Positions 2,615-44,846 of a DNA stretch of 64,000 nt are shown piece after piece. The DNA is taken from IMG/VR virus record IMGVR_UViG_3300042934_000594, positions 186,001-250,000 of that record. One strand, written 5' to 3'. The number at the start of each line of letters is the position of its first letter. Position 1 is the first letter of the stretch. The notes below the pieces were generated by a model. That model did no database searches. It was not told the origin of the DNA and worked only from the letters and a program-made list of their open reading frames with translations. Both the position numbers and the translations under genes were made by a program.

Positions 2615-4864
2615 TTACTCCCCGACGCGCGAGGCGGAACCATTGACGGTTTGACCAGCGCCGCCGGTGGCGCCGTGGTGGTCAGCGAAGCGATCCAGGA
2701 TCGCCACGTAGGCCTTGGCCAGCGATGCCACGTAACCGATCAGGTTGCCCGACGGGGTAGCGTACGCTTTGGACAGACCGTTCATCAACTGCTGACCGTT
2801 AGACGCCCAGGCCACGCCCATGTTGCGGCTGTACCAGTCACGGCCCAGATCTTCGACTTCCTTGGCAAACAGCTCATTGTTGCGCTTGGCATCTTTGAGG
2901 TCTTCCAGGGTCGCGAGCAACGCGGCGCATTCAGCGACCATCTGCTTGAGTACACGAGCATCCGGTACCTTCACACCGTCACCACCGCTTGGCAGCATCT
3001 TGGCGTTGGCCAGACGAGCGAACTCGACCTGGAAGATGTTGCTGAACTGGAACGCCAGCGACTGGCTCTCGTCCAGACCGGCGCGCTCGGCCGATTTGTT
3101 GAGCAGCACGTAGAACAGTGCCATGTTGCCTGGGAACACTTTGGTGCGTGCCACAGCCGAGGACTTGTTGAACTTCGCCGGAATTTCTTCCGCCTTGGCT
3201 TTCTCGGTTGGCATGCCCACGAACTTCAGGTTGTCCGACACCGCATCAGAGATCACCGACATCAGTTGGCCGTCAGCCACATCGTGCCCTTGCAGGAAAC
3301 CCTTGAGGCCGTCCTTGATCGCCTTGACGGTCTTGGTCAGCACTTTCGGGTAATCTTGCACGAAGTACTCGACCGTGTCGTTGACCACACGGATCGGGGC
3401 TGCGGTGTCACCGACGAAGAAGCCACCGATACTCAGACGGTCTGCACCGTTGACCACCATGCGTTTCTCGTTGGTGCTGCGGATGCTGTCGACCTTGGCC
3501 TTGACTTCGTCCAGCTTGGTCACCAGGGCACCGGTATCGTGCATGATGCCGTTCCAGATGTCAGCCAGCCACTCGAGCAGTTTCTTGACGGCCGCGCGAG
3601 CGATTTCCATCATCTGCTTCATCTTGCCTTCGGTGGCGGCGACCGACTTGTTCGAAGCTTCGTGCTGGGTGGTGGCCACAGCGAAGTCTTCGTTGGACGG
3701 CACGCCGTCGAGCAAGAACTGCTCACCGAACGCTTCCAGGCCGATGCGGATCGATTTGGCCAGGGTCGGCGAAACCACGCCGTCCTTGTCGATGGCATGG
3801 GTCAGCAGGGCGTGGTATTGCTCGAGCGCTGTGCTCACCACGTCGATGCGGTCCAGGTCGTCAGCCACTTCATTCATGTGGCGGTTGGCGATCTGCACTT
3901 CCGATTCGCTGTCCGGCATGTCGAACGGCAGTACTTCGCCTTCTTCTTCGTTGGAGGCCGAGGTGGCTTCTTCGGAAGCAGCGCTACCGGCTTCGCCGAC
4001 GGCAGCTTCACCGACGTGGGCTTTGACGGTGGCATCAGACACCGGCTTGGCCGTGCCTTCTGGATCAACCTTGGCCGCTTCGCTCAGCGCGTCTTCAGTC
4101 GACACGGTGGTGGCGTTTTCAGCCGCTTGCTGCTCGTCGCCTTTAGGGGCGGTGAATTCCATCTCGGTCTTTTCAGCCTTGATGGGTTCAGCAGTACCGG
4201 CCAGGACGCGATTGCCTGCGTCGTCCAGGGCGTCTTCGTTGGAACCGCCAGTGACTTCTTTGGCAGCCGTTTCGATCTCGACTTTGACGTTCTTGTCGTT
4301 GATCGGTTTGGCGGTGCCTTCAGGGTCCACTTTGGCCGCTTCAGACAAAGCGTCTTCGTTGGAGGTTTCAGTCACCTCAGCCGCTGCGCCTTCCACAATG
4401 GGTGCGCCGGTGGCGTCTGGTGCAGGCAGGCCTTCACCCACTTGCGGGGCTGCGGCGTTCTCGCCTTCGACAGCGCCTGGGGCGTTAGCAGCCAGAGCAC
4501 CGTCCACCACGCCTGTGCCGGCGTCAGGGCCTTGAGGCACTACGGCAGCGGCGATGGGCTCAACAGGCGACGCACCGGCTTCAGGGGCCACAACAGCGCC
4601 TTCTACCACAGGTGCAGCCGCACCGCCCTCCACTTCACCCGCATTGGCGCCGCCATCAGAACCGGTGGTCAGTGCGTCGTCAGCAGCAGGACCGCCTTCA
4701 GCGTTCTCTGTTGCAGCTGCGGTTACTTCAGGCACGCTGGCTTCTTCGCTCGTACCTGGCACGGCATCTTCAACGGGCTTTTCAGAAGACGTGGCCGACA
4801 CAGCGCCGGATTCAGCGTCTTCGTTACTGACTCGTTCCAGCCAGTTTTTGAGTTTTACAGTCAT
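2615..4864 (-). CDS. Internal head / inner-body protein (phiKZ gp162-like) with long acidic repeat propeptide
   Basis: 749 aa; acidic Ala/Glu-rich N-terminal half with many SxE sites; C-terminal domain paralogous to 1401..2612; highly biased codons. Confidence 0.75.
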   Translation of the reverse strand: MTVKLKNWLERVSNEDAESGAVSATSSEKPVEDAVPGTSEEASVPEVTAAATENAEGGPAADDALTTGSDGGANAGEVEGGAAAPVVEGAVVAPEAGASPVEPIAAAVVPQGPDAGTGVVDGALAANAPGAVEGENAAAPQVGEGLPAPDATGAPIVEGAAAEVTETSNEDALSEAAKVDPEGTAKPINDKNVKVEIETAAKEVTGGSNEDALDDAGNRVLAGTAEPIKAEKTEMEFTAPKGDEQQAAENATTVSTEDALSEAAKVDPEGTAKPVSDATVKAHVGEAAVGEAGSAASEEATSASNEEEGEVLPFDMPDSESEVQIANRHMNEVADDLDRIDVVSTALEQYHALLTHAIDKDGVVSPTLAKSIRIGLEAFGEQFLLDGVPSNEDFAVATTQHEASNKSVAATEGKMKQMMEIARAAVKKLLEWLADIWNGIMHDTGALVTKLDEVKAKVDSIRSTNEKRMVVNGADRLSIGGFFVGDTAAPIRVVNDTVEYFVQDYPKVLTKTVKAIKDGLKGFLQGHDVADGQLMSVISDAVSDNLKFVGMPTEKAKAEEIPAKFNKSSAVARTKVFPGNMALFYVLLNKSAERAGLDESQSLAFQFSNIFQVEFARLANAKMLPSGGDGVKVPDARVLKQMVAECAALLATLEDLKDAKRNNELFAKEVEDLGRDWYSRNMGVAWASNGQQLMNGLSKAYATPSGNLIGYVASLAKAYVAILDRFADHHGATGGAGQTVNGSASRVGE

Positions 4865-20977: not shown

Positions 20978-21772
20978 TTACCAGTTACGCAAGAAGGCCG
21001 GGGCTTTCTGTACGTCACGTGCTGGGTGTTTGCTCCAACCCAGTGCGTTGATCAGGTCATTGGCATCCAGACCCCCGTGTTCCAGCCCGAGCGAACGCAT
21101 GCGCTTTTGCTCATCAGCCAGTGACCACAGCATGGTCGGAGTGATCTCGATCGCCCGATCCGTGAAATCTTCCAACGACGGCGAGTTGTACTTGTTCGCC
21201 CCCAAGATCCCACCTTCACCCACGTAGTCCCAAGTCACGATTTCACGGGTGTACTTGATGCCACGGGTGATGTCATCCATGGTCACCGAGCGCACCGAGA
21301 AGTACGTGTTCTCGTGTGGGTTTTCGAACGAGTCTTTGACCACGTGGCCGTAAGGACCACACGGACGGATCTCAGCCATCACGTAGACACACGGACGGCC
21401 CTTTTCATCGCGCTGGTTTTCCAACAGGTAGACCCGGCGGATGTGCGCACAGCGACGGTCGTCGTCGATCTTGCGAATCCGTGCCAGGTACTGCTGGTCG
21501 TTCATGGGCTTGCCATCAGGCATGAACGGTTCAGGGTGCTTGTACTCAGCGTAGACCACGCCTTTAAGCATCCGGCGTACCAACACGCTGTTTTCCTTGA
21601 ACATGCTCAGACCTGACGCCAAGTCGTAGTGCATACCCATGGAGTTGTCGGTGCCGTAGGCCCCGACGATCTGCGTGTAGTAGCCATCTTTGTCCGGTGT
21701 CAGGATACCCTGCTTACCGGTGCCTTTGAGCATCGAACAACTGATGCTCGTGCGGTTGGTTTGTGGGAGCAT
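20978..21772 (-). CDS. Prohead (head maturation) protease, phiKZ gp175-like
   Basis: EYKHPEP (His), YFSVRS (Ser) and TWDYV (Asp) motifs of T4 gp21/phiKZ gp175 type; C-terminal SLE/GLE autocleavage sites. Confidence 0.85.
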   Translation of the reverse strand: MLPQTNRTSISCSMLKGTGKQGILTPDKDGYYTQIVGAYGTDNSMGMHYDLASGLSMFKENSVLVRRMLKGVVYAEYKHPEPFMPDGKPMNDQQYLARIRKIDDDRRCAHIRRVYLLENQRDEKGRPCVYVMAEIRPCGPYGHVVKDSFENPHENTYFSVRSVTMDDITRGIKYTREIVTWDYVGEGGILGANKYNSPSLEDFTDRAIEITPTMLWSLADEQKRMRSLGLEHGGLDANDLINALGWSKHPARDVQKAPAFLRNW

Positions 21773-21782
21773 GCTCCACCTC

Positions 21783-22502
21783 TTAAGTCCGTAGAAGTTC
21801 TTCGATCCGCTCCACCCGCTCACTGGGGTTCACAAGGGCGGAGGTAATGCTGTCGCTGAAGTACGAACCGATCAACTTACTGGTGGTGTCAGAGGTGTTC
21901 CAAATCACACTTCGGAAAGGCACCACGGCCGGGGGCCGTTCATCGACGTCACTGTAATCTTGCAGCACGTGCTTGTATAACTGCGTGAAGTCGTCAGCGT
22001 TACGACCCATCGTGGAAATGATCAACTCCGGCACGGCTCGGTTGCCCAAGTTAATGCCGGCGTACTCTTCAGCGGTTTCAAACAACTTAAGCATGTCGAA
22101 GTAGTTAAACGACCACGGCATGTTACCCTTGGCGACGTGCTCATCGTAGATGTAGTACGTCAAGGTGTCATTCTTAACCAGATCGATCCCGTAGAACACC
22201 CGGTCACCCGGGAAGAAGCTGAACTCGATGTAGGCCGTATTGCGGATGGTGACACGTTCGGTAGAGCTTGGGGTGATGCGGATCATCGCCGCCGTTTCAG
22301 ACACGGTGTAGAACTGGTCATTGACGATCAAGGAGAAGAACGCGAGGATGTACACCTCGGTGCCAATGCTCGCCAAGTGACGGGTGGTGTAGCGTTCAGG
22401 GATCTGAATGCGTACGTGAGCATCTGTGACGATGCTCCCGTCGTCCTGCTCAAACAGGTGTTTGTGTACGGCGGCCGGATCACGCTTGAGCTGACCGGCC
22501 AT
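21783..22502 (-). CDS. phiKZ gp176-like virion protein (RNAP-associated, beta'-C-terminal-like)
   Basis: ELIISTMGR...SDTTSKLIGSYFSDSITSALVNPSERVERIEELLR C-terminus; synteny. Confidence 0.65.
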   Translation of the reverse strand: MAGQLKRDPAAVHKHLFEQDDGSIVTDAHVRIQIPERYTTRHLASIGTEVYILAFFSLIVNDQFYTVSETAAMIRITPSSTERVTIRNTAYIEFSFFPGDRVFYGIDLVKNDTLTYYIYDEHVAKGNMPWSFNYFDMLKLFETAEEYAGINLGNRAVPELIISTMGRNADDFTQLYKHVLQDYSDVDERPPAVVPFRSVIWNTSDTTSKLIGSYFSDSITSALVNPSERVERIEELLRT

Positions 22503-28894: not shown

Positions 28895-28896
28895 GG

Positions 28897-30598: not shown

Positions 30599-33500
30599 AT
30601 GGCTACCAAGAAAACAAAACCCACCAACAAGCCGATGAAACTCGAGCCGTTGGATCTGGGGAACCTCGACGATTTTCTCGACGACAACCCCAACCCTGAA
30701 ATCAAAAAGGGTGGGGCGCTGCGAGACCTGCGCCTTGGGTTTAAGAAAGGCTTTCTGGAACAAACAAAAGTCAAGACCCTGATGCGCAGCTTCCTGCGCA
30801 CCGGTATTCCTGATGGGTACTCCCGTGCGTTTGGCGCTATTGACGACGCCAAGCGTACGGCAGACCAGATCTACCAGGATGTGAAGCAGACCAACGCGGC
30901 TGACTTCGACTTGATTGCTGAGAAAGCCGAATCGCTGTTGCCAAAGCTCAAAGGCCGGCTCAACGATAAGCACTATCAGAAAATCGCTGACTCGATTGCC
31001 AGTAAGCGTGAAGACTTCAAGTACCTGGCTCGCCAACCACGCAATGCCGCCGAACGGGCGCGCATGCAACAGATGGCACAGCGTCAAGCGGATGAACAGA
31101 AGATTCAGGCTGAACTGTTCTCCGAATCGGAATCCAACGCCGACGCTCGCTTCCAAGCCGAGCGTGCTGAACGGGGGATCCGCGATAAAGTTTCCTCAGC
31201 GCGCTTTAACAGCATTGCGCAGAACATGGGCATTATTGCCGATGCGGCGTCGTCTGAAAAAGCTTACCGTGATCAAATTGGTTATACCCTACAACGTAAA
31301 GGCGTCGAGTTACAATTCCGCTCGTACTTTGCGTTGCGCGATTTGGTCAAGTACGCCGAGACCTCTTTGCAGGTCAATAAGGAAGCGTACGAAGCGATCG
31401 TTCGTAACACCGGCTTGCCTGATCACCTGAAATCCACCAGCGCTGAAATGGTGAACTTCACCGGTAAGCGTGCCGCCGCCAAGTATGCCGTCGACAAGCT
31501 GCCTGATTTCCTCGCGCAGTTCATGCCACAGATTCAGGCCAACTTGACTGGCATGGCCCGTCAAGGGATGTCGAGCCTGGGCATGGCGATGGGTGCTGGC
31601 GATGGCATGGACTTGGGGCAACTCAAGAACAAGAAGTGGGAACTGCTGGGTCAGGGCTTGGGTGCTTTGGGTGGCAACTATGCTAAATCCAAAGTCATGC
31701 CGTTTGTGTCTCGCAAGACCAAACCGCATTTGGAGCGCCTGTCCAACAAGTACTTGGGTGGTGGCCATGACCTGGCCAACTACTACATGAACAACGCGTC
31801 CTCCTCGCTTCAGGACTGGACCCAGGACTATGAAAACTCCGTGGGTGGTAAGGGCATTTTGCAGGACTTCCTGCGCATGGTCGTGCCACAGTACAGCCTG
31901 AACAATCAGCTCAAAGAGGGCGGTTATCACACCATTGATAAGCAGGCCGCCTTTAACCAGTTGACGCAGCGTTCGATCACCGAGATCATCCCGGGGTATC
32001 TGTCGCGTTTACTGCAAGAAGTACGCATGATCCGCACCGGCAGTGATGACGTTGAACGGGAAACCTTCGACATCACCAAGGGTAAGTTCACGGGGATGAA
32101 AAACGCCCTGAAGAACCAACAAGACCGCATCATCACCACGCAGCAACGCACTGCGGTCTCAGGGGCGCTGAACGATGCGCTGAGCAAGTTTGACGAGCAA
32201 GGTGAACTCTCCCCTGAAGCGCGTGCTGCGTTGTCTGAGCGCATTCTGCGGGACTCGGCCACCAATGGTCGGTTTGACCCAGGGCAGTACGCCAACGCCG
32301 CTGGCTACCGTCATGACACCGCACAAACCACCACCGACGAGCTGCGTAAGTTCTTCGCGAACAAGTTTGAGTTGGACGCCAATGGCAAGACGGTTCGCAA
32401 CGCTGCTAACAACGGTAAGCTGAACCAGTACTCCGACGCCTTCTTGAATGTGCGTAACGTCACCGGGGATCCACGCACTGAGATCAAACGTTTGTTTGGC
32501 AGCGGTAACCATGAAATGCTGCGCGAGTTGGGGTTGGTAATCAACGAGAACGGCATGGACCGGATCAACTACGACAAAGTGTGGGAATTGTACCGCACGG
32601 ACGTTCCTGGCGGCCCTGGAGGTGGTGGTCCAGGTGGCGGTGGACCGGGCGGTCCTGGCGGAGGTCCCGGTGGACCCGGTAACGGCCCTGGTGGACCTGG
32701 GGGTCCGGGCGATGTGTTTGACCCGAACAACCCTCCGCCACCTGGCTCGAACACCATTCGGATTCTGCGTGACAAAGTCAAGCAGGCCGAGGACGCTGCG
32801 AAGCGACGCTTGGGAGGTCTTCGTGACCAAGCCGCTGACCGTGGGTTTGACCGTGCTTACCTGGGCGGTTTGGCTGCTAAGGTCAAAGGGAAGATGCCGG
32901 CCTTTAATACAGACGCGGTGTTGGATCGGATTCGCAGCATTAAAATGCCGGATGTGGACCGTACCAAGCTGCTTGCCATGATTGGTGGGTTGCAGTTACC
33001 CAACATGCCGCCTGTGAACAAGCAGATGCTCACGCAGATGCTGTCCTCGGTGCGCATGCCGACCGTCGATCGTCAAGCCCTGTTGGCGATGCTGCCTGAT
33101 GCCGGTCAAGCCAAACTGCAATTTGCGGGGATGACCAACCGCTTTACCCCACGTCAACCGTTGGCGTTGCCACACCTGGACGCCTTGCGTGAACGCGGTG
33201 GGGCGATGATGCCGTCGGGCTTGCCAAGCTTTAACATGCCAGGCCTGCCGGGCTTCCAGATGCCAACCTTCAACCTACAGGGCTTGCCAAGCAAAGCCTC
33301 GTTGGGCGAACACCTGAGCAAGTTGGGTGACCGTCTGCCGAAGGTGGACTTGGACATGATCCGTGACACTGCCAGCCGCTTGCCGAAACTGGACAAGAAA
33401 GAACTGGCGGTCTACGGCGCTTTGGGTCGAGCCAAAGGTCAGGAAGTCATCAAGAAGTTGCTGGGTGCCGGTGAGCAAGGCATGGCCTGCATTAAAGGCC

Positions 33501-36500
33501 TGTTGGAATCGGGAATGGTAACCGGGGAGTCGATGTACCAAGTCGCCACCGATCCTAAGTTGGTGGACGACGTGACGTCCCAAGCCATCGCCCTGGGCAG
33601 CTCGCTGCGCAGTCAGGCGCAGAACGCATTGGGTTCTGACCCGGTGAGTAAACTGCAACTCAAACTGGCTGAAGGCAAGGACGTGGTGGTCGGTAAAGCG
33701 GGGGCTGCGGCAGAGGTGGTCAATGACCTCTATGTCAAGGGCACCAACGAGCTGGCTATCCGTGCTGCGGATCTTGAGGCCGGTAACCTGATCGACGCTA
33801 CCTCTAAACAGGTGATCACCAAACTCGAAGACATTAAAGGCACTGTCATTGACAAGGCTGGGAATGTGCGAGTGACCGCGGCGCAGTTGGGTCGAGGTCT
33901 GGTGGACGCTTACGGTGAAGTCAAAGCCTTGGTACCGTTCAAAGGGGCCATGGCGTGGGCGGGCAAGCAGTACGCGGCAGCAGCGGGGGCTTACTGGACA
34001 TGGTTGGCCGGTAACTTCCAAGGCAAGAACGCGCTGATGGGTACCCAGGGTGTGCAGGATCTGTACCTACCGGGTCGTAAAGAACCGGTACTGCTGGCAC
34101 GTGACATTGAAGCCGGCCTGTACATCAACCAGGAAACCAATCGGCCGATCGAGTCGTTGGATGACATCACAGGTCCTGTGGTCGATCAGAACGCTCAGGT
34201 GGTGCTGACCAGTGCCGACATTGAGAAGGGCCTCTACACCGCTCAAGGCGGTAAGGTCAAACTCAGTCGCTTTAAGATCCTCTCAGGGGTGATCAAAGCA
34301 GGTCTGTCGCCGGCCACGACCTTGATCAAGGCTCAGCTCTGGCTGGCCAAGAAGGTCGCCACCATTGCTATCAAGTCGGTCATGGTGTTGGATGCGTACC
34401 TGCCGGGCGTTAAAGAGCCGCTACTGCGTTCGAGTGTGCTTAAGAACGGTGGTTACTTCTACGCTGACGGCCGCCCGATCCGTTCGTTCGACGACCTGCG
34501 TGATGGGGTCTTTGATGAGCGGGGTAATGAATTGGTCTCCGCCGAGGAGATCCCTCACCTGATCAACCGCGATGGCTCCAAGCACACCGCCGCCAAGCGT
34601 CGCAGCTTGGTGCGCAAGTGGGGCAAGAAGATCCTGACTGCGCCGTTTAAGGCAGTCGGTCGCGGTTACATGAAACTCACCAAGGGTTATTACAACTGGC
34701 TGGGGAGTAAGTTCAGCGGGGGACGTAAAGGTAAAGCGGGTCAGCCGTTGTCACCTGAACTGCAAGCGATCATTGCCAAGCGCGGTGGTAAGGGAACCGA
34801 CCCTATCGGCACCCCAACCGATGCCTTGCTCGCTAACATTGCTCAAACCCTGGACCGTCGTTTGCCTAAGGAAGCGCCAACTGAAGGCAGCTGGCAACAA
34901 CAGCTGGCTGAACGTGAAGCGCTGGAAGCCCAGGCACGGGCGAAGAAAGCCGCCAAGGATCCTCGCGACCCGAAAGGGAAGAAGGAGAAAGGGTTGCTGG
35001 AACGCCTGGCCGCGAAACTGGGTGCCGGGAAGGCGGCGGGTGAGGAAGAGGAAGGCGGTGGTATCGGGGACATCAACATCGGAGAAGGTGAGGAGAAGGA
35101 TAAGCCTCGCAGTCGTCGAGACCGTGCCCGTGATCGCCTGCGTCGTCGTAAAGAAGCCAAGTATGGGCGGTTCCGTAAGGGCATCCTGCGTGGCGGGCGT
35201 GCGGTGATGAACTCAGGGGTGGGTCGTGCCGCAGGGTCCTTGGGCATGAATGCTGCACGCCTAGGTGCCACGGCGCTGCTCGGTGAGGGCGCTGTAGCCG
35301 CATTGGGTACCGGTGCGTCCATGCTCGGTGGGGGTCTGGCATCGGCCGGTGGTGCATTGGCTACCGGAGCAACGGCAATCGCTGGGATTCTCTCAGCGCC
35401 AGTGGTCTTGGGGGTTTTGGGTGTGGCTGCCGTCGGGGCGGGTGCGTACTGGCTCTACAGCCGCGACCGCGACTCGTCAGGGGACTTCCGTGAGTTCCGT
35501 CTGGATCAGTACGGGATCGGTAACGATTCCACCAGCCGGGCATTGAAGATCCTCAACCTGGAAGCCGCATTGGAAGCCAGCGCCTCGAAAGGGGCTGAAC
35601 CACAGTTGAACATCTCGGCTGAGAATGCGTCGAAGCTGGTTGATATCGTCGGACTGGACATGAACGATCCGCAGAAACTGGCGGAGTTCGGTAAGTGGGT
35701 CGACCTGCGATTCAAACCGGTGTTCTTCACCTACCTGCGTGCCATGAAAACCATGGGCTTGAACTGCAAGGTCAACGAGCTGGATGATAAGCTCTTGCCT
35801 GAACAGAAAGCCGGCTTCTTGGAACTGGTGCGCATGTCCACGGGTGCGGACTCGCCATACGCGTTCACCGCGTCCCCGTTTGCCGATGGGGACCCACTGA
35901 CCGTTACCGCCGAACAGGTCACCAAGCATTACGAGGAGCTCAAGGCGAAGTTTGCCAAAGACGCCCCAAGTAAGGACACCACCAAAACCGCAGAGACTGA
36001 GAAGTCCACTGGAGCTGCTGCTGTGGCAGCAGGTGCTGCGGCAGTGGGGGCTACCGGGGCAGTTAACGCTGCTGCGGCTGCTTCAGGTGTACCTGCCCCA
36101 AGCAACGTCATTCCGTTTGTCGCTAAAGGCACTGGCCCCTCGACTGGGGTCATGGGTAAGCTGACGGCTGGGACGGCCTCAGTCACGGCATTCACAGGCA
36201 ACAAGGTCTCGGCCTTGCAAGCCATCCGCATGCGTGCGTACGGCCTCTTCGGATTGTCGGTCTCGCGGGTGTCGGCGTTGATGTCGATTGAGGAAATCGT
36301 CTTTGCGGGGGTGCAAACCTCCACAGGCGGTTTGTCGGAGTTCACCGGGGATCAGGAAACGTTCCTGGATGACGCTGCGACGGCACTGGGCTTTAACATC
36401 GCAGACCCTGCTTCTCAAGAGCGGGTGGATTTCATCAACTGGGTGCAGTACCGTTTCATGCCCGTGGTGTTGACCTACTGTTCAGCGGTGAAGAACCAGG

Positions 36501-38209
36501 ACGCGTCGATTCAAATGGCGCGGGTGGAACAAGGAATGTCTGCCATCGGTAAGGTGGGTGTAGCCAATGCGTTGATTGCCGCGACCAGCGACTACAATGA
36601 CGACAAGGTGTCGGTCTGGAAGGTGCCTAGCATTCTTCTGCCGACTGCGCCTGAGCAGGTGATGTTGGACCTGGCCAAGGCTGACTTGAAGGCATTGCAG
36701 GATGAAGCCGACAAGGTCAAACTCAATACCCCAACCCAATCGGGCGCTGCGCAAAACGCGGCGGCTAATGGTGGGAGTGCGGCCATGGTCGCAGGGGCTG
36801 AGATGGCCGGCAGTAAGTCGGGGGCTGAGTCAGGGGGCTTCCTGAACGGGGTGAACAACTTCGTAGCCGGTGTTGAGGACTCGATCTCCAATGCAGCGTC
36901 CAAGGTAGGGGATTCTATCTCCAGTGCTGCCTCGGGTGCCAAGAACACCGTTAAAGGGTGGTTGGGGATGGACGACAACAAGCCGTCGACACCAGGAGGC
37001 ACCATTGGCGGTGCGGGTAACGTTACGGCGATGGCCAAGGGTAATGGCGGTAGCTGGGAGAGTGTGCCGATGCCAACGGCCAAGACGCGGGCAGGTTGTA
37101 TGCCTTCGTTCTTGAAGATCCAGGACCTGTCGGGGATGGACGCTAACCTGTTGGCCACGTTCGCCTCGATTGAGTCGAACTTCAACTGGGAAGTTAAAGC
37201 CTCGACGTCGTCCGCCACAGGTTGGTTCCAGTTCATCAACGCGACCTGGGACTACATCTTGAAGTTAGCCGGTGGTAAATACGGTTGCCCTCAGGATGAC
37301 GGTGCACGCTCCTTGCGTAAAGACCCACGGATCAACGGTTTGATGGGGGCCGAGTACATTAAGCTCAGTTACGAGACGCTGTCCAAAGGCTTAGGCCGGG
37401 CTCCAACGGACACCGACTTGTACATGGCGCACTTCCTCGGTCCAGGCACAGCGGTGAAGTTCCTGAAAATGGACAAAAACACCGATGCTGTGAACGCCTT
37501 CCCGCAACAGGCAGGTGCCAACAAATCGATCTTCTTCAAGAAGGGTGGTTCGCACAACACCTGTGGAGAGGTCTACGCCATCATGGACGCCAAGGTGGCC
37601 AAGCACCGCGGTGCAGGCGGGACATCGGTGACCAAGCAAGTCTTGCCCGGTGACACCGATCCGGTAGCAGCTGCTGAAGCGCAAGCTAAGGCCACTGCCG
37701 CCAGTGCAGCAGATGGGATTCAGCAGACCCCTGGTTTGCCGAACGCTGCCAACGATCCGTCTGCCGCAGCACCAAACCTCAGCCAAGCCACCAACGCTAC
37801 GGTCAACCCGTTGAATGCCCAAGCCGCTACCGGCACTGCCGGCACGCAAGGCACCTCGGGGGCGCCTAACGCACCGGTGGGTTCAGGTCAGGACGATCCC
37901 ACCCTGCAAGCGTCGCAGAACGCTCAGATGCAACAAGCTCAAGCGCAAGACAAAACGCGCGCGGCGCAAGTCCAAGACCAGCAAGCTGCAAGCAAGTCGG
38001 CCATGGACATTCAAAGCAAGCAGCTTGATGAGCTTGTGGAGATGAAAGGGTATCTGAAGACGATTGCTGACAACATGGGACTGCTCAAACCTTCGGGGAC
38101 GAGTCAGGTTGCACCCGCGTCGTCTGGCAATGCTATAGACAACTCTGCACCGCAGCGTACTGATCGCAGTGTCGGCCAAGGCCGTCCACCGCTTCAGATG
38201 ACTCGCTAA
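30599..38209 (+). CDS. Giant tail (tape-measure-like) protein with C-terminal lytic transglycosylase (phiKZ gp181-like)
   Basis: 2536 aa; ASIESNF...SSATGWFQFINATW...YMAHFLGPG SLT motifs; hydrophobic Gly/Ala segment; divergent from the RNAP genes as in phiKZ. Confidence 0.9.
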   Translation: MATKKTKPTNKPMKLEPLDLGNLDDFLDDNPNPEIKKGGALRDLRLGFKKGFLEQTKVKTLMRSFLRTGIPDGYSRAFGAIDDAKRTADQIYQDVKQTNAADFDLIAEKAESLLPKLKGRLNDKHYQKIADSIASKREDFKYLARQPRNAAERARMQQMAQRQADEQKIQAELFSESESNADARFQAERAERGIRDKVSSARFNSIAQNMGIIADAASSEKAYRDQIGYTLQRKGVELQFRSYFALRDLVKYAETSLQVNKEAYEAIVRNTGLPDHLKSTSAEMVNFTGKRAAAKYAVDKLPDFLAQFMPQIQANLTGMARQGMSSLGMAMGAGDGMDLGQLKNKKWELLGQGLGALGGNYAKSKVMPFVSRKTKPHLERLSNKYLGGGHDLANYYMNNASSSLQDWTQDYENSVGGKGILQDFLRMVVPQYSLNNQLKEGGYHTIDKQAAFNQLTQRSITEIIPGYLSRLLQEVRMIRTGSDDVERETFDITKGKFTGMKNALKNQQDRIITTQQRTAVSGALNDALSKFDEQGELSPEARAALSERILRDSATNGRFDPGQYANAAGYRHDTAQTTTDELRKFFANKFELDANGKTVRNAANNGKLNQYSDAFLNVRNVTGDPRTEIKRLFGSGNHEMLRELGLVINENGMDRINYDKVWELYRTDVPGGPGGGGPGGGGPGGPGGGPGGPGNGPGGPGGPGDVFDPNNPPPPGSNTIRILRDKVKQAEDAAKRRLGGLRDQAADRGFDRAYLGGLAAKVKGKMPAFNTDAVLDRIRSIKMPDVDRTKLLAMIGGLQLPNMPPVNKQMLTQMLSSVRMPTVDRQALLAMLPDAGQAKLQFAGMTNRFTPRQPLALPHLDALRERGGAMMPSGLPSFNMPGLPGFQMPTFNLQGLPSKASLGEHLSKLGDRLPKVDLDMIRDTASRLPKLDKKELAVYGALGRAKGQEVIKKLLGAGEQGMACIKGLLESGMVTGESMYQVATDPKLVDDVTSQAIALGSSLRSQAQNALGSDPVSKLQLKLAEGKDVVVGKAGAAAEVVNDLYVKGTNELAIRAADLEAGNLIDATSKQVITKLEDIKGTVIDKAGNVRVTAAQLGRGLVDAYGEVKALVPFKGAMAWAGKQYAAAAGAYWTWLAGNFQGKNALMGTQGVQDLYLPGRKEPVLLARDIEAGLYINQETNRPIESLDDITGPVVDQNAQVVLTSADIEKGLYTAQGGKVKLSRFKILSGVIKAGLSPATTLIKAQLWLAKKVATIAIKSVMVLDAYLPGVKEPLLRSSVLKNGGYFYADGRPIRSFDDLRDGVFDERGNELVSAEEIPHLINRDGSKHTAAKRRSLVRKWGKKILTAPFKAVGRGYMKLTKGYYNWLGSKFSGGRKGKAGQPLSPELQAIIAKRGGKGTDPIGTPTDALLANIAQTLDRRLPKEAPTEGSWQQQLAEREALEAQARAKKAAKDPRDPKGKKEKGLLERLAAKLGAGKAAGEEEEGGGIGDINIGEGEEKDKPRSRRDRARDRLRRRKEAKYGRFRKGILRGGRAVMNSGVGRAAGSLGMNAARLGATALLGEGAVAALGTGASMLGGGLASAGGALATGATAIAGILSAPVVLGVLGVAAVGAGAYWLYSRDRDSSGDFREFRLDQYGIGNDSTSRALKILNLEAALEASASKGAEPQLNISAENASKLVDIVGLDMNDPQKLAEFGKWVDLRFKPVFFTYLRAMKTMGLNCKVNELDDKLLPEQKAGFLELVRMSTGADSPYAFTASPFADGDPLTVTAEQVTKHYEELKAKFAKDAPSKDTTKTAETEKSTGAAAVAAGAAAVGATGAVNAAAAASGVPAPSNVIPFVAKGTGPSTGVMGKLTAGTASVTAFTGNKVSALQAIRMRAYGLFGLSVSRVSALMSIEEIVFAGVQTSTGGLSEFTGDQETFLDDAATALGFNIADPASQERVDFINWVQYRFMPVVLTYCSAVKNQDASIQMARVEQGMSAIGKVGVANALIAATSDYNDDKVSVWKVPSILLPTAPEQVMLDLAKADLKALQDEADKVKLNTPTQSGAAQNAAANGGSAAMVAGAEMAGSKSGAESGGFLNGVNNFVAGVEDSISNAASKVGDSISSAASGAKNTVKGWLGMDDNKPSTPGGTIGGAGNVTAMAKGNGGSWESVPMPTAKTRAGCMPSFLKIQDLSGMDANLLATFASIESNFNWEVKASTSSATGWFQFINATWDYILKLAGGKYGCPQDDGARSLRKDPRINGLMGAEYIKLSYETLSKGLGRAPTDTDLYMAHFLGPGTAVKFLKMDKNTDAVNAFPQQAGANKSIFFKKGGSHNTCGEVYAIMDAKVAKHRGAGGTSVTKQVLPGDTDPVAAAEAQAKATAASAADGIQQTPGLPNAANDPSAAAPNLSQATNATVNPLNAQAATGTAGTQGTSGAPNAPVGSGQDDPTLQASQNAQMQQAQAQDKTRAAQVQDQQAASKSAMDIQSKQLDELVEMKGYLKTIADNMGLLKPSGTSQVAPASSGNAIDNSAPQRTDRSVGQGRPPLQMTR

Positions 38210-38260: not shown

Positions 38261-40243
38261 ATGGCTACAATCGATCGGGGTCCGATCTGGCTACGGCATG
38301 CGTTTCTGACTCCGACCTCGGAAGACCAGACGCAGTACGGGTCTGAAACCAAACGTCGTTTCGCAACCTCCGCCGCCTTTAAGTTCACCAACACCACGTT
38401 GGGGGGCAACTGGTGTATTAACAACCCACCACAATTTACCCGTTGGGCTGACATTCGCCAACCGGGTCGTGGACGGGATGAATCCAAGGACAGTCGCAAG
38501 TGGGGGATGGGGCGTTACTACTCCGAGGCGATTGATGATCCACGGCAGATGGTGACGATGTCCTTCGGGGTACCGCGCTTCTCCAACTGGTCCAGCTTCT
38601 TTGTTAACTTCTACGACCGTAACTCGGCACTGCTCGCTAACACCGGCCGGGTGAACGATCTGTGGTACAACCTGGGCAACGTCGGGGGCTTTATTGTCTC
38701 CCTGCCGATCCAGCCGATTATCATGGGGGTGATGGGCGTCAGTCGGGTGCTGTCGTTCTTGGGCAAGTCCTCACCCAGCAAATGGATGTACTTTAAACCG
38801 TCGATGCACGTGTACTGGTCCACGGTCAACACCATTGCCAACGAAATGGCGATCAACATGGGACTGATCCCTAAGGTGCTGCCTGAAGCGCAGCGTCCTC
38901 TGGAGGATCCGGGTCAGCGCGTGACGTTGGACGACATCAAGCGTTTCCATGAAATCATCCCAGACATCTTCCGGGCTGAGGGCGGGGTGGACGTCATGTC
39001 GCTCGCCGGTAAGACGCAGCGCATGTCCGACGCCTCTCAGCGCAACTTGCAGGCCATGGCCGATAAGGCCGCAACGCTCGCCGACCTTAAGGCCAGCATT
39101 GAGAAGTACCAGCAAGAAGCGGTGACTGACCCCAACCCGGGGTACTCGGCCAGGCAGTACATGGAGGAGTACATCAAGAACGCCGACACGGTCACCGACG
39201 GTGGGCCTTCCACGGAAAGCTTCTCCAGTTGGAGCGAACTCACCAAGGTCTCGGACTTTATCATTGCGGCGCAGCGCGACGCCATGCAGTTCGTTTCCTT
39301 CCGGGTCAAGCACAATGGGTCCCTGTCCGAATCCTGGAGCAGCACCACCAAAGCTTCTGAGGTGGCGCAGCAGATCAACACCAAAGTCTCGGCAGGCCGG
39401 TCGGTGTCGTTTAACACGATGAACGGTGGGATCGTTCCTGGGATGTCCGATGTTCTGGACAAAGTGCAGTCTTACGCAGCCGGTGCGTTGGACTCGGTGA
39501 ACCTGGGCGGTCTGGCGGTCCTGACGGGTACGGCGTTTATTGACGTGCCTGAGATGTGGGAGTCGGCATCAGCCACCCTGCCTTCGGCCAGCTACACCGT
39601 TACCCTGGACAGCCCGTACGGCAACAAGATCTCTCGGTTCATGAACCTTATGATCCCGATCGCCATGTTGCTTGCAGGAGGGCTACCGTTGTCGGCAGGT
39701 CGGTCGGCTTACACCTCGCCATTCCTGTGCCAGATCTACCACCAAGGGCGTGTACAGCGGCAACTGGGGATCATCGATGAGATCACCCTGACCCGCGGTA
39801 CTGGCAATGTGGGTTGGAACGCTGAACATGATATGCTCGGCGCTGAACTCACCTTCAACGTCAAGGATCTGTCTAGCATCATGCACATGGGTGTCAAAGG
39901 CGGATACGCCTCGGCATCTTGGCTGGGTACAGCGACCCGTGCTGCGGCTGCTACCGTGGGAGAGGCGGTAGGGGGTAGCACCGGTCTGAACACCGCTGTC
40001 GCGCTGACTGATCCATCCGTGTACGACGAATCGAGTCTGTTCAATGATTACATTGCCACGATCACGTCGTTGTCCTTGGCTGACGCCTTCTACGCTGGGA
40101 AGCGCTTGAATGTCAACCTGACCCGTTCCGTGCAAGCTTTCAAATCCTGGCGCAGTCCTTCGAACCTACTGAGTTGGGGCTTGGACGGCGGGACCGCACG
40201 GTTCATCTCGGCATTTGCCAACACCACTGACCGTCTTGAATAG
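38261..40243 (+). CDS. Baseplate/tail structural protein (phiKZ gp182-like)
   Basis: KFTNTTLGGN..INNPPQFT..AD, GMGRYYSEAIDD and YTSPF motifs; follows the gp181-like gene. Confidence 0.75.
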   Translation: MATIDRGPIWLRHAFLTPTSEDQTQYGSETKRRFATSAAFKFTNTTLGGNWCINNPPQFTRWADIRQPGRGRDESKDSRKWGMGRYYSEAIDDPRQMVTMSFGVPRFSNWSSFFVNFYDRNSALLANTGRVNDLWYNLGNVGGFIVSLPIQPIIMGVMGVSRVLSFLGKSSPSKWMYFKPSMHVYWSTVNTIANEMAINMGLIPKVLPEAQRPLEDPGQRVTLDDIKRFHEIIPDIFRAEGGVDVMSLAGKTQRMSDASQRNLQAMADKAATLADLKASIEKYQQEAVTDPNPGYSARQYMEEYIKNADTVTDGGPSTESFSSWSELTKVSDFIIAAQRDAMQFVSFRVKHNGSLSESWSSTTKASEVAQQINTKVSAGRSVSFNTMNGGIVPGMSDVLDKVQSYAAGALDSVNLGGLAVLTGTAFIDVPEMWESASATLPSASYTVTLDSPYGNKISRFMNLMIPIAMLLAGGLPLSAGRSAYTSPFLCQIYHQGRVQRQLGIIDEITLTRGTGNVGWNAEHDMLGAELTFNVKDLSSIMHMGVKGGYASASWLGTATRAAAATVGEAVGGSTGLNTAVALTDPSVYDESSLFNDYIATITSLSLADAFYAGKRLNVNLTRSVQAFKSWRSPSNLLSWGLDGGTARFISAFANTTDRLE

Positions 40244-40574: not shown

Positions 40575-40895
40575 TTGGATATCGAACTGACAGCACGCGA
40601 ACCGGTACAGTTGCCCAAGCGTGTGAAGCTCACTGAGGTGCAGGTGGTGGACGTGGTCACTGAAAGCGGTCGCTCATTGTTGACCGAACTGACAGTGGTC
40701 GAATCTAAGAAGGCTGTGCACAAGGACGACCCACGCACGGCATTGTTTCTTCGCGCGCAGACGGATGACAATGGTCCTTTTACGCGTACTTACGCTATGA
40801 TCTTGATGGACCGGAAGAAAGGGACAATTGAATTGAGCATTGCCCCAGATTACTTCCATCAGTCCATGATCGCAAAGTTGCACATCAATTCATAG
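40575..40895 (+). CDS. Hypothetical protein
   Basis: GGAGG RBS, TTG start. Confidence 0.6.
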   Translation: MDIELTAREPVQLPKRVKLTEVQVVDVVTESGRSLLTELTVVESKKAVHKDDPRTALFLRAQTDDNGPFTRTYAMILMDRKKGTIELSIAPDYFHQSMIAKLHINS

Positions 40896-40922
40896 CTACC
40901 CTGACTTGGTCCTGAGGCATGT

Positions 40923-41288
40923 ATGGAAGTCAATCTCCCGTTCTTTGAAGGCGCCCGTGTGGCGATGCCCGATAACATCATCGACGCTGTTTCCTTAAAG
41001 GAGGCAGTCAACGGTGAGGGGCTGTCCCTTAAAGAGCTGTTGTTGGATAAAAAGGATTACGGTTTCTACCACGAGAAGAACCACATTCGTCCGCAAGACA
41101 ACGTACAGGCGTATTCGCTGTACGGCAAGGTACCCGCTGACCGTCGGGCCAAGCATTCGTTAATGGCCTACATCCACTTTGACTTAAAAACCCGCATGAT
41201 CACACTCAACAACGTCAACCCCCTGCTAGCGCGAGGACGACTGTTGTTGCGTTTGGACCTGCGTCGTCGTGAGGCTCTTTCCGCATGA
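40923..41288 (+). CDS. Hypothetical protein
   Basis: GAGG RBS; ATGA overlap with the next ORF. Confidence 0.65.
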   Translation: MEVNLPFFEGARVAMPDNIIDAVSLKEAVNGEGLSLKELLLDKKDYGFYHEKNHIRPQDNVQAYSLYGKVPADRRAKHSLMAYIHFDLKTRMITLNNVNPLLARGRLLLRLDLRRREALSA

Positions 41289-41638
41289 TACATGAACAAC
41301 CCATCTTGACCAGTTTTAAGGACTTTGATTTGCTGGCTGCTGCTGGCCGTACGGACCTGTTGGCTGCCGAGGGCAAGAACATTATCACCGGCCTTGGGTG
41401 GGGTGGGTTGTTCTTAAACGGCGTGCCTCACCCGGAAGATGCCAAGACCACCGTCCAGCCGTCGGTGGTGCCTGATCACGACCCAGACCTGGCCGTCATT
41501 GAAGTTGAACACCTGACCATCACCGTGAGCATGCGGTCTGGACGCTGCACGGTGGAGGATGCCCTTAACCGCCCTACTGACCAGGCCCCCTTTGGGATCT
41601 TGCGCCTGCGTCTGCCTGATCGAGGAATGCCCCTGTGA
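41285..41638 (+). CDS. Hypothetical protein
   Basis: Coupled at both ends. Confidence 0.65.
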   Translation: MIHEQPILTSFKDFDLLAAAGRTDLLAAEGKNIITGLGWGGLFLNGVPHPEDAKTTVQPSVVPDHDPDLAVIEVEHLTITVSMRSGRCTVEDALNRPTDQAPFGILRLRLPDRGMPL

Positions 41639-42117
41639 CCCGCGTACTGAGTCAATACTTTGCCCGCTTGCAAATCTCCCAGGAGGCGTCTGTTGAAGGC
41701 GCCCCATTGGGCGACCCTGGTGACAGTGTCGAGTTGTCGTTGCCACCTTTGAACGAACACTCCAAGAACCTGAGCATCGTGGCCTCTGGGGCCAATGAGA
41801 CCACAGGTGCCCATCATCGCTACGACATCGCCAACTTCGATGCCAGTACCAACCCGGCCTACCGCGACTCTGACACCGCTAACCTGCTGACGATTCTGTT
41901 CCAGCAAGGGCCCGTACCGGACGTCGGCATCAACGGCGTCACCCCAGAAGCGGTACTGGTGTGTCTGCTGCATCTGTTTGAAGGGTATCAGACCAGTAAG
42001 TTTGCCTGCCCTGAGAACGAGGAGGCCATCAAAGGTTTCCAGGCCTCGCTCGATGCCATTCGCTCACGCACAGCGTCGCGGATTGAACGAGGCGTTGAAG
42101 GTACTCATCAAGCGTAA
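41635..42117 (+). CDS. tad1: Tad1-like anti-Thoeris/anti-CBASS nucleotide sponge with N-terminal extension
   Basis: GAHHRYDI, LFQQGP...GINGVT.E, YQTSKFACPENEEA and R..SRIERGVEGTH match the Tad1 pattern (GAxHxY, FQxG, FQ..F..rEN..A, R...RI.R.V.GT). Confidence 0.82.
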   Translation: MTRVLSQYFARLQISQEASVEGAPLGDPGDSVELSLPPLNEHSKNLSIVASGANETTGAHHRYDIANFDASTNPAYRDSDTANLLTILFQQGPVPDVGINGVTPEAVLVCLLHLFEGYQTSKFACPENEEAIKGFQASLDAIRSRTASRIERGVEGTHQA

Positions 42118-43442: not shown

Positions 43443-44846
43443 ATGACTGAAGCAACCCCAGCTGTTGAACGCGGCGTATTGATCGTCCTGGAAGGTCAGG
43501 AATACGTAGGCAAATCCACCCAGCGCGATTTGCTTGCTGAGCGCCTGCGCGCATTGGGCCATGACGTGGTGGTAACCCGTGAGATCGGCGGTACGCCCTA
43601 CGCTGAAAAGATTCGCACCCTGGTCCTGAACACCGACCGCGACGGCGAGCATGTTTCTCCGCTGACCGAAATGCTGTTGGCCTACGCCGCCCGTTCACAA
43701 CACTTGGAGCAAGTCATTGCACCAGCCCTGGAAGCCGGTAAGATCGTTCTGACCGATCGCTTCGTAGCCTCCACGTTCTGCTACCAGGTCTGGCCGTACA
43801 TCGACGGCAACATGCAGCATGGTCTGTTGAACATGTTCATGGGCCTGAACGGTTCGGTTCTGTCGGGCATCATCACCGAAGAACCTCTGGTGTTGATCCA
43901 GACGCTGAACGATGAAGACTGGCAAGCACGCCGTCGTGCCAACAACAAGCCTGACATCATCGAAAGCCGTGAAGTGGAATTCCATGCCAAGGTTGCCGCC
44001 GCGTATGCGCAGCATGCCGGTGCCCCGAACCACCACCTGGTCGATGGCGGTCGTGAAATCCAAGTGATCAACGACGAACTGTTCCAGCTCGTGACTGATT
44101 ACCTGGCCGCCACCAAGATCGTGCGCAAGCAAGCCGCTGAAGCGCGTGCGGCGCAAGCCGAACTGACCGAAGCTGGGATCAGCGACATGCCGCCTGAATT
44201 GGCGGCTCTGATGAACCAGATTCAGATGGCCCAACCCGGTGACGTCCATCCCGGTGTGAAGTCCTATGAGGAAGCGCAAGCAGAAGGCTTCCCGGGCACT
44301 GAAGCGGAATGGGTGACTTACGTCAGCGCCATGCAACAGAACGCTCTGCACGGTGAGCCTGGCAATGGCACCTTCGACCCTGAAGCTGAGCGTCTGATCA
44401 CTGACTACGCCGAAGCCAAGAACCTGGGCTTTGATGGTACGGAAGAAGAATGGCAGGCGTACCTGGCTGAGCAGGGCATCAACTCCACCTTTGCTGTACC
44501 GGTGCAGCAGAAGACCATCCAGGAAAACATCGACGCGTACTACGACCTGGCACAACGCTACGACGCCGACCCTTCGCAACTGACTGAGGGGGAGCGCAAG
44601 TCGGTCGAAGAGTTCCGCGCCAAAGCTAAAGCCACCATGGCTGAAGTGACGCAGGTGGCTTCCACCATCGACAACGTCTCGGCAGTGTTTGCCCCGACCT
44701 TGGCTGAGCTGGGTATGGGTGTGGACGACCTGTCGTACGAAACCGCACAAAGCAAAGGCTTTGACGGCACGCGTGAAGAGTGGGATGAGATGCTGAACAA
44801 ATACGTTCCAGCGGACCTGAACCCTAACGCCGCCGCGGCGCAGTAA
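43443..44846 (+). CDS. tmk: Thymidylate kinase with long acidic repeat-containing C-terminal extension
   Basis: LEGQEYVGKST P-loop, TREIGGT, LLAYAARSQH and LTDRF..ST..YQ motifs. Confidence 0.92.
   Translation: MTEATPAVERGVLIVLEGQEYVGKSTQRDLLAERLRALGHDVVVTREIGGTPYAEKIRTLVLNTDRDGEHVSPLTEMLLAYAARSQHLEQVIAPALEAGKIVLTDRFVASTFCYQVWPYIDGNMQHGLLNMFMGLNGSVLSGIITEEPLVLIQTLNDEDWQARRRANNKPDIIESREVEFHAKVAAAYAQHAGAPNHHLVDGGREIQVINDELFQLVTDYLAATKIVRKQAAEARAAQAELTEAGISDMPPELAALMNQIQMAQPGDVHPGVKSYEEAQAEGFPGTEAEWVTYVSAMQQNALHGEPGNGTFDPEAERLITDYAEAKNLGFDGTEEEWQAYLAEQGINSTFAVPVQQKTIQENIDAYYDLAQRYDADPSQLTEGERKSVEEFRAKAKATMAEVTQVASTIDNVSAVFAPTLAELGMGVDDLSYETAQSKGFDGTREEWDEMLNKYVPADLNPNAAAAQ

What the first reader, a model, noticed from the sequence alone, without database searches (positions are those of the whole stretch)
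41635..42117. Tad1-like immune-signal sponge with an N-terminal extension carrying head-protease sites: possibly virion-delivered
Established: Tad1 proteins sequester gcADPR (Thoeris) and some CBASS cyclic nucleotides, and phiKZ-type head protease cleaves after S/A/G-x-E. Seen: a clear Tad1 core is preceded by ~35 extra residues containing ISQE|ASVE|G and DSVE, the same kind of motif found at the N-termini of head proteins in this window (VSNE|D, VSVE|A). The usual D-R-L before FQ reads HLF-EGYQ here. Inference: the sponge is packaged, matured and injected with the DNA to pre-empt signalling, and may have altered ligand preference.
Basis: partly seen in the sequence, partly recalled or inferred. 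Interest (0 to 1): 0.62.

Follow-up and report, generated by a model that had tools for sequence, protein, structure and literature searches.

The report
Packaged Tad1 immune-signal sponge, phiKZ-type

Summary
Window 41635-42117 (+) encodes a 160-aa protein with a Tad1 core (residues ~31-160). Ahead of it lie about 30 extra residues carrying three S-x-E motifs (SQE17, SVE21, SVE33).

It is the syntenic, clade-level ortholog of phiKZ gp184. The best solved-structure hit is 8Y6V chain I (E 1e-24). The gene order gp175 protease, virion RNAP, gp181, gp182, small ORFs, this gene, thymidylate kinase is kept.

The literature already reports that phiKZ gp184 is Tad1, is a minor capsid protein cleaved by the head protease, and is injected.

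New details:
- The extension is minimal. It is a predicted helix (residues 2-16) ending in S-x-E, and it resembles the N-termini of five of this phage's six confident internal head proteins.
- It lacks the long acidic and beta-rich segment of phiKZ gp184.
- The gcADPR/cyclic-dinucleotide pocket residues are kept (Y118, N128, R145, R149).
- The cyclic-trinucleotide and hexamer residues (R90, T97, W103 equivalents) are missing here and in all 13 jumbo-phage or fusion relatives examined.
- 'HLFEGYQ' is a clade trait shared with phiKZ, not a peculiarity of this gene.

Packaging, cleavage and ligand binding were not tested here.

The parts
41635..42117 (+). Tad1-like gene (160 aa), ortholog of phiKZ gp184
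   Evidence: ORF. PDB phmmer gives gp184 at E 1.1e-24 and Tad1 at 1.2e-9. PHROG 23843, 2428 and 22140 match. Fold shown.
41622..41626 (+). Shine-Dalgarno-like GAGGA, 8 nt before the GTG start; the start overlaps the upstream stop (GTGA at 41635-41638)
   Evidence: Sequence. The same arrangement, with ATGA and GGAGG, is found in relatives L041 and L042.
41635..41685 (+). Residues 1-17: predicted amphipathic helix ending in S-Q-E; proposed capsid-targeting propeptide with the most likely protease site after E17
   Evidence: AF2 predicts a helix at 2-16 and disorder at 18-25. The site is conserved at P1 16-17 in P0005-7 and at P1 13-16 in phiKZ-, Phabio- and 201phi2-1-like relatives. It resembles the N-termini of this phage's PF12699 internal head proteins.
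41689..41697 (+). Second S-V-E motif (residues 19-21), in the disordered linker
   Evidence: Not conserved in P0005-7.
41725..41733 (+). Third S-V-E motif (residues 31-33). It aligns with the canonical Tad1 N-terminus (M-R-E) and lies in the first predicted strand, so it is probably less accessible.
   Evidence: Alignment A2. Strand at 32-34 and pLDDT about 89.
41725..42114 (+). Tad1 core (residues 31-160). The gcADPR/CDN pocket residues Y118, N128, R145 and R149 are kept. The cyclic-trinucleotide-site equivalents are P126 and K133.
   Evidence: Mapping to CbTad1 through the HMMER alignment, residue roles from bioRxiv 10.1101/2023.11.15.567273, and the column table.
20978..21823 (-). Head maturation protease, homolog of phiKZ gp175
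   Evidence: 50% identity over 272 aa to the KTN4 'putative head protease', E 2e-96. Same gene order as phiKZ.
2615..4864 (-). Internal head protein (PF12699) whose N-terminus (L-K-N-W-L-E-R-V-S-N-E|D) is of the same kind as that of the Tad1-like protein
30599..38209 (+). gp181-like giant virion protein (synteny anchor)
   Evidence: Position and size match KTN4_221. No Pfam hit.
38261..40243 (+). gp182-like virion structural protein (synteny anchor)
   Evidence: PHROG 3181 at E 1.7e-217. 64% identity to Pseudomonas phages BRkr and PA1C.
43443..44846 (+). Thymidylate kinase with a C-terminal extension (downstream synteny anchor)
   Evidence: PF02223 at E 3.9e-27. Same position in KTN4, Phabio, PA1C, L041 and L042.

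Best explanation
The gene encodes a Tad1-family sponge for immune signal nucleotides and is the ortholog of phiKZ gp184.

Proposed mechanism:
1. The protein is made late in infection.
2. A short N-terminal propeptide directs it into the prohead. This propeptide is a helix at residues 2-16, of the same type as on this phage's internal head proteins.
3. The gp175-like head protease removes the propeptide after an S-x-E motif, most likely after E17 (or E21).
4. This leaves a mature protein of about 140 aa, the size of a canonical Tad1.
5. The mature protein is ejected with the DNA at the next infection.
6. In the cytoplasm a dimer sequesters gcADPR (Thoeris) and probably cyclic dinucleotides (CBASS) before any phage gene is expressed.

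Shown here: family, fold, pocket residues, orthology, presence of the protease, the motifs and their conservation.

Inferred from the phiKZ ortholog and from sequence: packaging, cleavage, injection and ligand binding.
For: Family and fold.

Pocket residues: the equivalents of CbTad1 F82, N92, R109 and R113 are kept in all 35 aligned relatives, with position 82 aromatic (F or Y) and the other three invariant.

Homodimer model: ipSAE 0.91 against a best control of 0.00. The runs agree in at least 96% of their contacts and the partner pLDDT is at least 89. The mark was reached by 20 of 30 proteins solved as pairs and 1 of 23 solved as single chains. The counts hold only roughly because my own alignment was used, and the pass may be from memory of solved Tad1 dimers.

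Orthology to phiKZ gp184:
- Best PDB hit.
- Conserved gene order from the protease to thymidylate kinase.
- Jumbo-phage clade supported 100/99.

Published biology of phiKZ gp184: Tad1, minor capsid protein, cleaved by gp175, injected.

Protease: a homolog at 50% identity lies in the window.

Propeptide:
- An S/G-x-E site at P1 13-17 occurs in 9 of 11 jumbo-clade proteins.
- Five of the six confident PF12699 internal head proteins of this genome begin with the same kind of motif.
- Helix followed by a disordered linker in the model.

Start codon: supported by three homologs and by translational coupling.
Against: - No experimental data exist for this phage, which is an IMG/VR contig.
- The protein lacks the roughly 70-aa acidic and beta-rich segment of phiKZ gp184. 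By the literature the N-terminal part of gp184 is what sits in the capsid, and I infer it is this segment. The mode of incorporation may therefore differ or be lost.
- The propeptide pattern was written after seeing the sequences, so it is post hoc.
- The helix has low confidence (pLDDT about 57).
- S-x-E is a short motif. Three in 35 residues occurs in about 1.4% of ORFs by chance.
- I could not read the exact verified cleavage positions in phiKZ gp184, because Thomas et al. 2012 and Li et al. 2024 are not held.
Confidence: 0.7

Rival explanations
1. It is a cytoplasmic Tad1 sponge expressed from the injected genome and is not packaged. The N-terminal 30 residues are a leftover of the longer gp184-type extension, or an oligomerisation or stability element, and the S-x-E motifs are coincidental.
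For: The segment of phiKZ gp184 that I infer to be the capsid-bound part (beta-rich, about residues 60-108) is absent. The short motif has a moderate chance expectation. Sites 2 and 3 are not conserved in close relatives.
Against: The first site and the preceding aromatic motif are conserved across a deep split of the jumbo clade. They match this phage's own internal head proteins. The canonical non-packaged Tad1s in the survey have no such extension. A decaying remnant would not be expected to keep a helix plus a site.
Confidence: 0.2
2. It is mainly a structural minor capsid protein (a vertex-complex component like phiKZ gp184), and the Tad1 fold has lost sponge activity.
For: phiKZ gp184 is modelled in the vertex-binding complex.
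Against: The modelled part of gp184 is described as mainly beta-strands and shorter than the cleavage product. Foldseek with the Tad1-core model did not hit 8Y6V chain I despite about 42% sequence identity. This suggests that the Tad1 core is not the ordered capsid-bound part. The ligand-pocket residues are kept throughout the family. phiKZ orf184 is non-essential.
Confidence: 0.05
3. The annotated start is wrong. Translation begins downstream at a TTG or GTG codon (residue 12, 25, 34, 36, 39 or 49), giving a plain Tad1 without an extension.
For: GTG is a rarer start codon, and several in-frame TTG/GTG codons exist.
Against: Three homologs have ATG at the equivalent position, with the same stop-start overlap and an SD box. 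Amino-acid conservation begins right after that start.
Confidence: 0.05

Closest known systems
phiKZ gp184 (Tad1; PDB 8Y6V chain I)
   Same: About 42% identity over the Tad1 core. Same genomic position between the gp182 homolog and thymidylate kinase. Same clade. An N-terminal aromatic motif followed by S-x-E near residue 15. 'LFEGYQ' in helix 1. The gcADPR/CDN pocket is kept and the CTN and hexamer residues are absent. A gp175-type protease is encoded nearby.
   Different: The extension, counted from the phmmer match that starts at residue 44, is 43 aa against 112 aa. The acidic linker, the helix and the beta-rich segment of gp184 (about residues 20-108) are missing. In this protein the propeptide directly abuts the core, so a stable capsid-bound N-terminal fragment is unlikely.
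Canonical Tad1 (CbTad1 7UAV/7UAW, CmTad1 8KBB, SBSphiJ7 Tad1)
   Same: Same fold, a beta-sheet plus two long helices. Same gcADPR/CDN pocket residues. A dimer is predicted.
   Different: - The window protein has an N-terminal extension.
- The R/K90 and T97 equivalents are P126 and K133.
- The hexamer-interface tryptophan equivalent is A141.

Binding of cyclic trinucleotides at the trimer-of-dimers interface is therefore unlikely. Canonical Tad1s in the survey sit on 10-80 kb contigs and carry no packaging signal.
phiKZ-type internal head proteins (PF12699; phiKZ gp93/95/97)
   Same: The same kind of N-terminal propeptide ending in S-x-E in this genome. In phiKZ these proteins are processed by gp175 and injected.
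   Different: No homology beyond the first 20 or so residues. The cargo is a Tad1 domain rather than the helical IP fold.
T4 capsid targeting sequence on internal proteins (IPI*, an injected anti-restriction protein)
   Same: It works alike, from my own knowledge and not tested here. A short N-terminal signal directs a small anti-defence protein into the prohead, the head protease removes it after a glutamate, and the protein is injected.
   Different: A different phage lineage and protease family member. No sequence relationship was tested.

Membership tests
Tad1 (Thoeris anti-defence 1) | Significant sequence similarity to experimentally characterised Tad1 proteins | tested here: met
   phmmer against the PDB gives CmTad1 8KBB at E 1.2e-9 and CbTad1 7UAV at E 5.7e-3. 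PHROG 2428 matches at E 1.5e-26.
Tad1 (Thoeris anti-defence 1) | Fold: N-terminal antiparallel beta-sheet followed by two long C-terminal helices | tested here: met
   AF2 model with pLDDT 85, strands at 47-51, 62-66 and 84-89 and helices at 104-119 and 126-152. The only Foldseek hits are Tad1 structures, at probability 1.0 and TM 0.73-0.78.
Tad1 (Thoeris anti-defence 1) | gcADPR/cyclic-dinucleotide pocket residues (CbTad1 F82, N92, R109, R113) | tested here: met
   The equivalents are Y118, N128, R145 and R149. The last three are invariant in all 35 aligned relatives.
Tad1 (Thoeris anti-defence 1) | Cyclic-trinucleotide pocket residues (CbTad1 R90, T97) and hexamer interface (CmTad1 W103) | tested here: not met
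   The equivalents are P126, K133 and A141. They are also absent in all 13 jumbo or fusion relatives, phiKZ-type included. The source paper reports that a minority (6%) of Tad1 homologs have CTN-site substitutions, so this feature does not exclude membership.
Tad1 (Thoeris anti-defence 1) | Dimer with the ligand pocket at the dimer interface | tested here: inconclusive
   Homodimer model with ipSAE 0.91 against a best control of 0.00. The mark was reached by 20 of 30 solved pairs and 1 of 23 single chains, and the counts hold only roughly because my own alignment was used. Run agreement is at least 96% and pLDDT at least 89. The pass may reflect memory of solved Tad1 dimers.
Tad1 (Thoeris anti-defence 1) | Binds gcADPR and rescues phage from Thoeris | not testable with these tools
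   Needs ITC or native gels and plaque assays.
phiKZ gp184-type packaged Tad1 | Orthology: same clade and conserved gene neighbourhood | tested here: met
   Tree clade supported 100/99. The gene order protease, vRNAP, gp181, gp182, this gene, TMK is kept.
phiKZ gp184-type packaged Tad1 | N-terminal extension with S/A/G-x-E head-protease motifs | tested here: met
   SQE17, SVE21 and SVE33. A conserved site at P1 13-17 occurs in 9 of 11 clade members.
phiKZ gp184-type packaged Tad1 | Cognate gp175-family head protease encoded by the phage | tested here: met
   Window 20978-21823 (-), 50% identity, E 2e-96.
phiKZ gp184-type packaged Tad1 | Long N-terminal region (acidic linker plus beta-rich segment) that stays bound in the vertex complex | tested here: not met
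   Absent here: the extension is 43 aa against 112 aa. The upstream ORF is not a split-off copy of it.
phiKZ gp184-type packaged Tad1 | Found in virions, cleaved, and injected | not testable with these tools
   Shown only for phiKZ in the literature.

The most novel reading that the evidence does not exclude
The short-extension subfamily (this protein and P0005-P0007) shows that a propeptide of about 17-21 residues, of the internal-head-protein type, is enough to load a foreign cargo into a phiKZ-like capsid as a free, fully released internal protein, with no capsid-bound remnant. This would be a portable capsid-targeting tag for Chimalliviridae, analogous to the T4 CTS. In addition, the whole jumbo-phage Tad1 clade would be a dimeric sponge for gcADPR and cyclic dinucleotides only, having given up cyclic-trinucleotide binding.
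Probability: 0.35. Interest if true: 0.5.

Novelty: new member of a known kind. Interest (0 to 1): 0.3.

Why it matters
A pre-made, injected sponge acts before the host can signal. This is a distinct counter-defence strategy, and it is already documented for phiKZ.

This locus adds three things:
- The trait is conserved in an uncultured lineage.
- It exists in a stripped-down form. That form points to the minimal packaging signal, which could be useful for loading cargo into jumbo-phage heads.
- It supports a testable prediction that jumbo-phage Tad1s have a narrower ligand range, with no cyclic trinucleotides.

It does not open a new class of system.

Tried and rejected
- **Pfam and NCBIfam.** No family matched the target. 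Pfam Peptidase_S77 does not detect the protease, which was found instead by direct comparison with KTN4 gp175.
- **Split gene.** I tested whether the upstream ORF 41285-41638 is the missing N-terminal part of gp184. There is no similarity.
- **Megablast to known phages.** Megablast of the locus against phage records found no match, so there is no near-identical cultured phage.
- **Sequencing runs.** No environment or host information and no read-level check were obtained, and read laying was not used.
- **Papers not held.** Thomas et al. 2012 and Li et al. 2024 (Nature) are not held. The exact gp184 cleavage positions and the ligand data for phiKZ Tad1 could not be read. The 2023 preprint of Li et al. 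does not mention gp184.
- It was rerun reading the stored protein from file.
- **Big protein search.** The search of protein representatives was not used, because the family was settled by the cheaper searches.

Full report
**What is there**

Window 41635-42117 (+) is an open frame of 160 codons. Its GTG start overlaps the TGA of the upstream ORF (GTGA) and follows a GAGGA box by 8 nt.

The window is bases 186001-250000 of a 269,430-bp IMG/VR virus record estimated to be 90% complete. No near-identical cultured phage is on record. The neighbouring gp182-like structural protein is 64% identical to those of Pseudomonas jumbo phages BRkr, PA1C and PS119XW.

**The Tad1 core is real**

Pfam and NCBIfam give nothing. 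PHROGs gives three unnamed families (E 1.7e-28 to 2.2e-24).

phmmer against the PDB gives:
- phiKZ gp184 (8Y6V chain I) at E 1.1e-24, query residues 44-159 against 113-228;
- CmTad1 (8KBB) at E 1.2e-9;
- CbTad1 (7UAV) at about 6e-3.

An AlphaFold2 model built on a 35-sequence alignment has mean pLDDT 85.4. In Foldseek its only significant hits are Tad1 crystal structures, at probability 1.0 and target TM 0.73-0.78.

**The extension and its motifs are real**

In the 35-sequence alignment, canonical Tad1 N-termini (M-R-E-L-T) align with residues 31-35 of this protein, so about 30 residues are extra. [SAG]-x-E motifs end at residues 17, 21 and 33.

In this genome the motif occurs at 0.012 per position. 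Only 4 of 288 ORFs have three in their first 35 residues.

The model shows a helix at 2-16 (low confidence), a disordered stretch at 18-25, and a confident core from about residue 31. The third motif lies in the first strand of that core. Sites 17 and 21 are therefore the accessible ones.

**The start codon is right**

Three relatives of 156-157 aa (51-55% identity) come from metagenome contigs with the same gene order. They start with ATG at the equivalent position (the window protein is one residue longer there), with an ATGA stop-start overlap and a GGAGG box. They also share the N-terminal L-S/G-K/Q-Y-Y/F motif followed by S/G-N-E at residues 14-17.

**It is the ortholog of phiKZ gp184**

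The phiKZ-type phage KTN4 has this order: head protease, two head proteins, a small hypothetical ORF, two virion RNAP subunits, gp181, gp182, one small ORF, the gp184 homolog, then thymidylate kinase a few genes later.

The window has the same order:
- protease at 20978-21823 (-), 50% identity, E 2e-96;
- virion RNAP subunits at 24500-30555 (-);
- a 2536-aa gp181-like protein;
- a 660-aa gp182-like protein;
- three small ORFs;
- the target;
- thymidylate kinase.

A maximum-likelihood tree of the core puts the target with its three close relatives (97/95). That group is sister to the phiKZ/Phabio/201phi2-1-type group (97/95), inside one jumbo-phage clade (100/99).

**What is already known about gp184**

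[quoted passage not shown] The paper states that it has verified head-protease cleavage sites and that large parts are not resolved (PMC11297242).
- Co-fractionation proteomics validated gp184 as an injected protein (PMC10449902).
- A transposon study names orf184 as tad1 and finds it non-essential. It summarises that the N-terminus is wedged in the capsid and that the C-terminus is freed by the head protease and injected (PMC12676376).
- A 2026 review says that Tad1 is injected by phiKZ and blocks CBASS and Thoeris (PMC13282480).

My Tad1-core model did not hit 8Y6V chain I in Foldseek despite about 42% sequence identity. This fits the view that the ordered, capsid-bound piece of gp184 is not the Tad1 domain, but the evidence is indirect.

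**What differs here**

phiKZ-type relatives carry extensions of 81-112 residues. These consist of an N-terminal aromatic motif with S/G-L-E near residue 14-16, an acidic linker, in some a helix and a beta-rich stretch, and a second S/G-x-E site 5 to 13 residues before the core. The target and its three close relatives have only about 40 residues, and the N-terminal motif with its site sits almost directly on the core. The upstream ORF is not a detached copy of the missing part.

Within this genome the target's N-terminus resembles those of the internal head proteins (PF12699), a family that is processed and injected in phiKZ. A pattern describing 'hydrophobic, aromatic, then S-x-E within the first 30 residues' matched 13 of 1037 raw ORFs. 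Of those 13:
- four are PF12699 proteins;
- one is the target;
- the other eight were not examined further, and most are short or lie on the opposite strand to longer ORFs.

A fifth of the six confident PF12699 genes shows the motif from an internal ATG. The pattern was written after seeing the sequences, so this is supportive rather than a blind test.

**Ligand sites**

The HMMER alignment to CbTad1 has chain numbering one higher than native numbering. Residue roles come from the Li et al. preprint.

| CbTad1 or CmTad1 residue | Role | Window equivalent |
|---|---|---|
| F82 | gcADPR/CDN pocket | Y118 |
| N92 | gcADPR/CDN pocket | N128 |
| R109 | gcADPR/CDN pocket | R145 |
| R113 | gcADPR/CDN pocket | R149 |
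| R90 | cyclic-trinucleotide pocket | P126 |
| T97 | cyclic-trinucleotide pocket | K133 |
| W103 (CmTad1) | hexamer interface | A141 |

Across the 35 sequences, N, R and R are invariant. The K/R-T-W triad is present in 16 of 22 non-jumbo sequences and in none of the 13 jumbo or fusion sequences, the phiKZ type included.

So an altered ligand range is plausible (no cyclic trinucleotides, perhaps a dimer rather than a hexamer), but it is a trait of the clade.

A homodimer of residues 22-160 is predicted with ipSAE 0.91 against a best control of 0.00. The mark was reached by 20 of 30 proteins solved as pairs and 1 of 23 solved as single chains, though the counts hold only roughly because my own alignment was used. 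The runs agree in at least 96% of contacts and pLDDT is at least 89. This may reflect memory of solved Tad1 dimers.

**Mechanism proposed**

1. Late synthesis.
2. Targeting to the prohead by the N-terminal helix.
3. Removal of 17 (or 21) residues by the gp175-like protease.
4. Ejection of a roughly 140-aa Tad1 with the DNA.
5. Immediate sequestration of gcADPR and cyclic dinucleotides.

Family, fold, pocket, orthology, protease and motif conservation are shown here. Packaging, cleavage, injection and binding are inferred.

**Verdict**

This is a new member of a known kind, with a minimal propeptide variant and a clade-wide loss of the trinucleotide site as modest additions.

Noticed in passing
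L010:5230-6357 (IMGVR_UViG_3300047320_000285, 253.7-kb contig): A 376-aa protein whose N-terminal part matches the phiKZ major capsid protein family (PF25620, profile 143-243, E 4e-25) and whose C-terminus is a Tad1 core. This looks like a capsid-protein fragment fused to the sponge, another apparent route to putting Tad1 in a head.
   Followed up: partly
L003:2347-3363 (Burkholderia phage FLC9 gp131); L006:5374-6360 and L007: A cyclophilin-type peptidyl-prolyl isomerase (PF00160, E 2.5e-44) fused to a C-terminal Tad1 core in a 322-kb jumbo phage and in two metagenomic contigs. In the tree these fusions group outside the phiKZ-type clade.
   Followed up: partly
G000 118037-124435 (L043) and window 2615-4864 (-): Five of the six confident PF12699 internal head proteins of this phage begin with a short aromatic motif followed by S/G-x-E at residue 13-20. 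These are likely propeptides for the gp175-like protease.
   Followed up: partly
window 43443-44846 (+): A thymidylate kinase (PF02223, residues 16-211) with a C-terminal extension of about 230 aa. The extension contains three similar acidic repeats (G-F-P/D-G-T-E/R-x-E-W). The relatives in L041 and L042 are shorter (385-393 aa).
   Followed up: no
window 40575-41638 (+): Three small ORFs (106, 121 and 117 aa) between the gp182-like gene and the Tad1 gene have no PHROG match and no Pfam match above the curated cut-off. ORFs of similar size occupy the same positions in L041 and L042. phiKZ has a single small ORF here.
   Followed up: partly
window 41476-41973 (-): A 165-aa antisense ORF overlaps the Tad1 gene and is slightly longer than it. 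A naive longest-ORF caller picks it instead of the real gene.
   Followed up: yes
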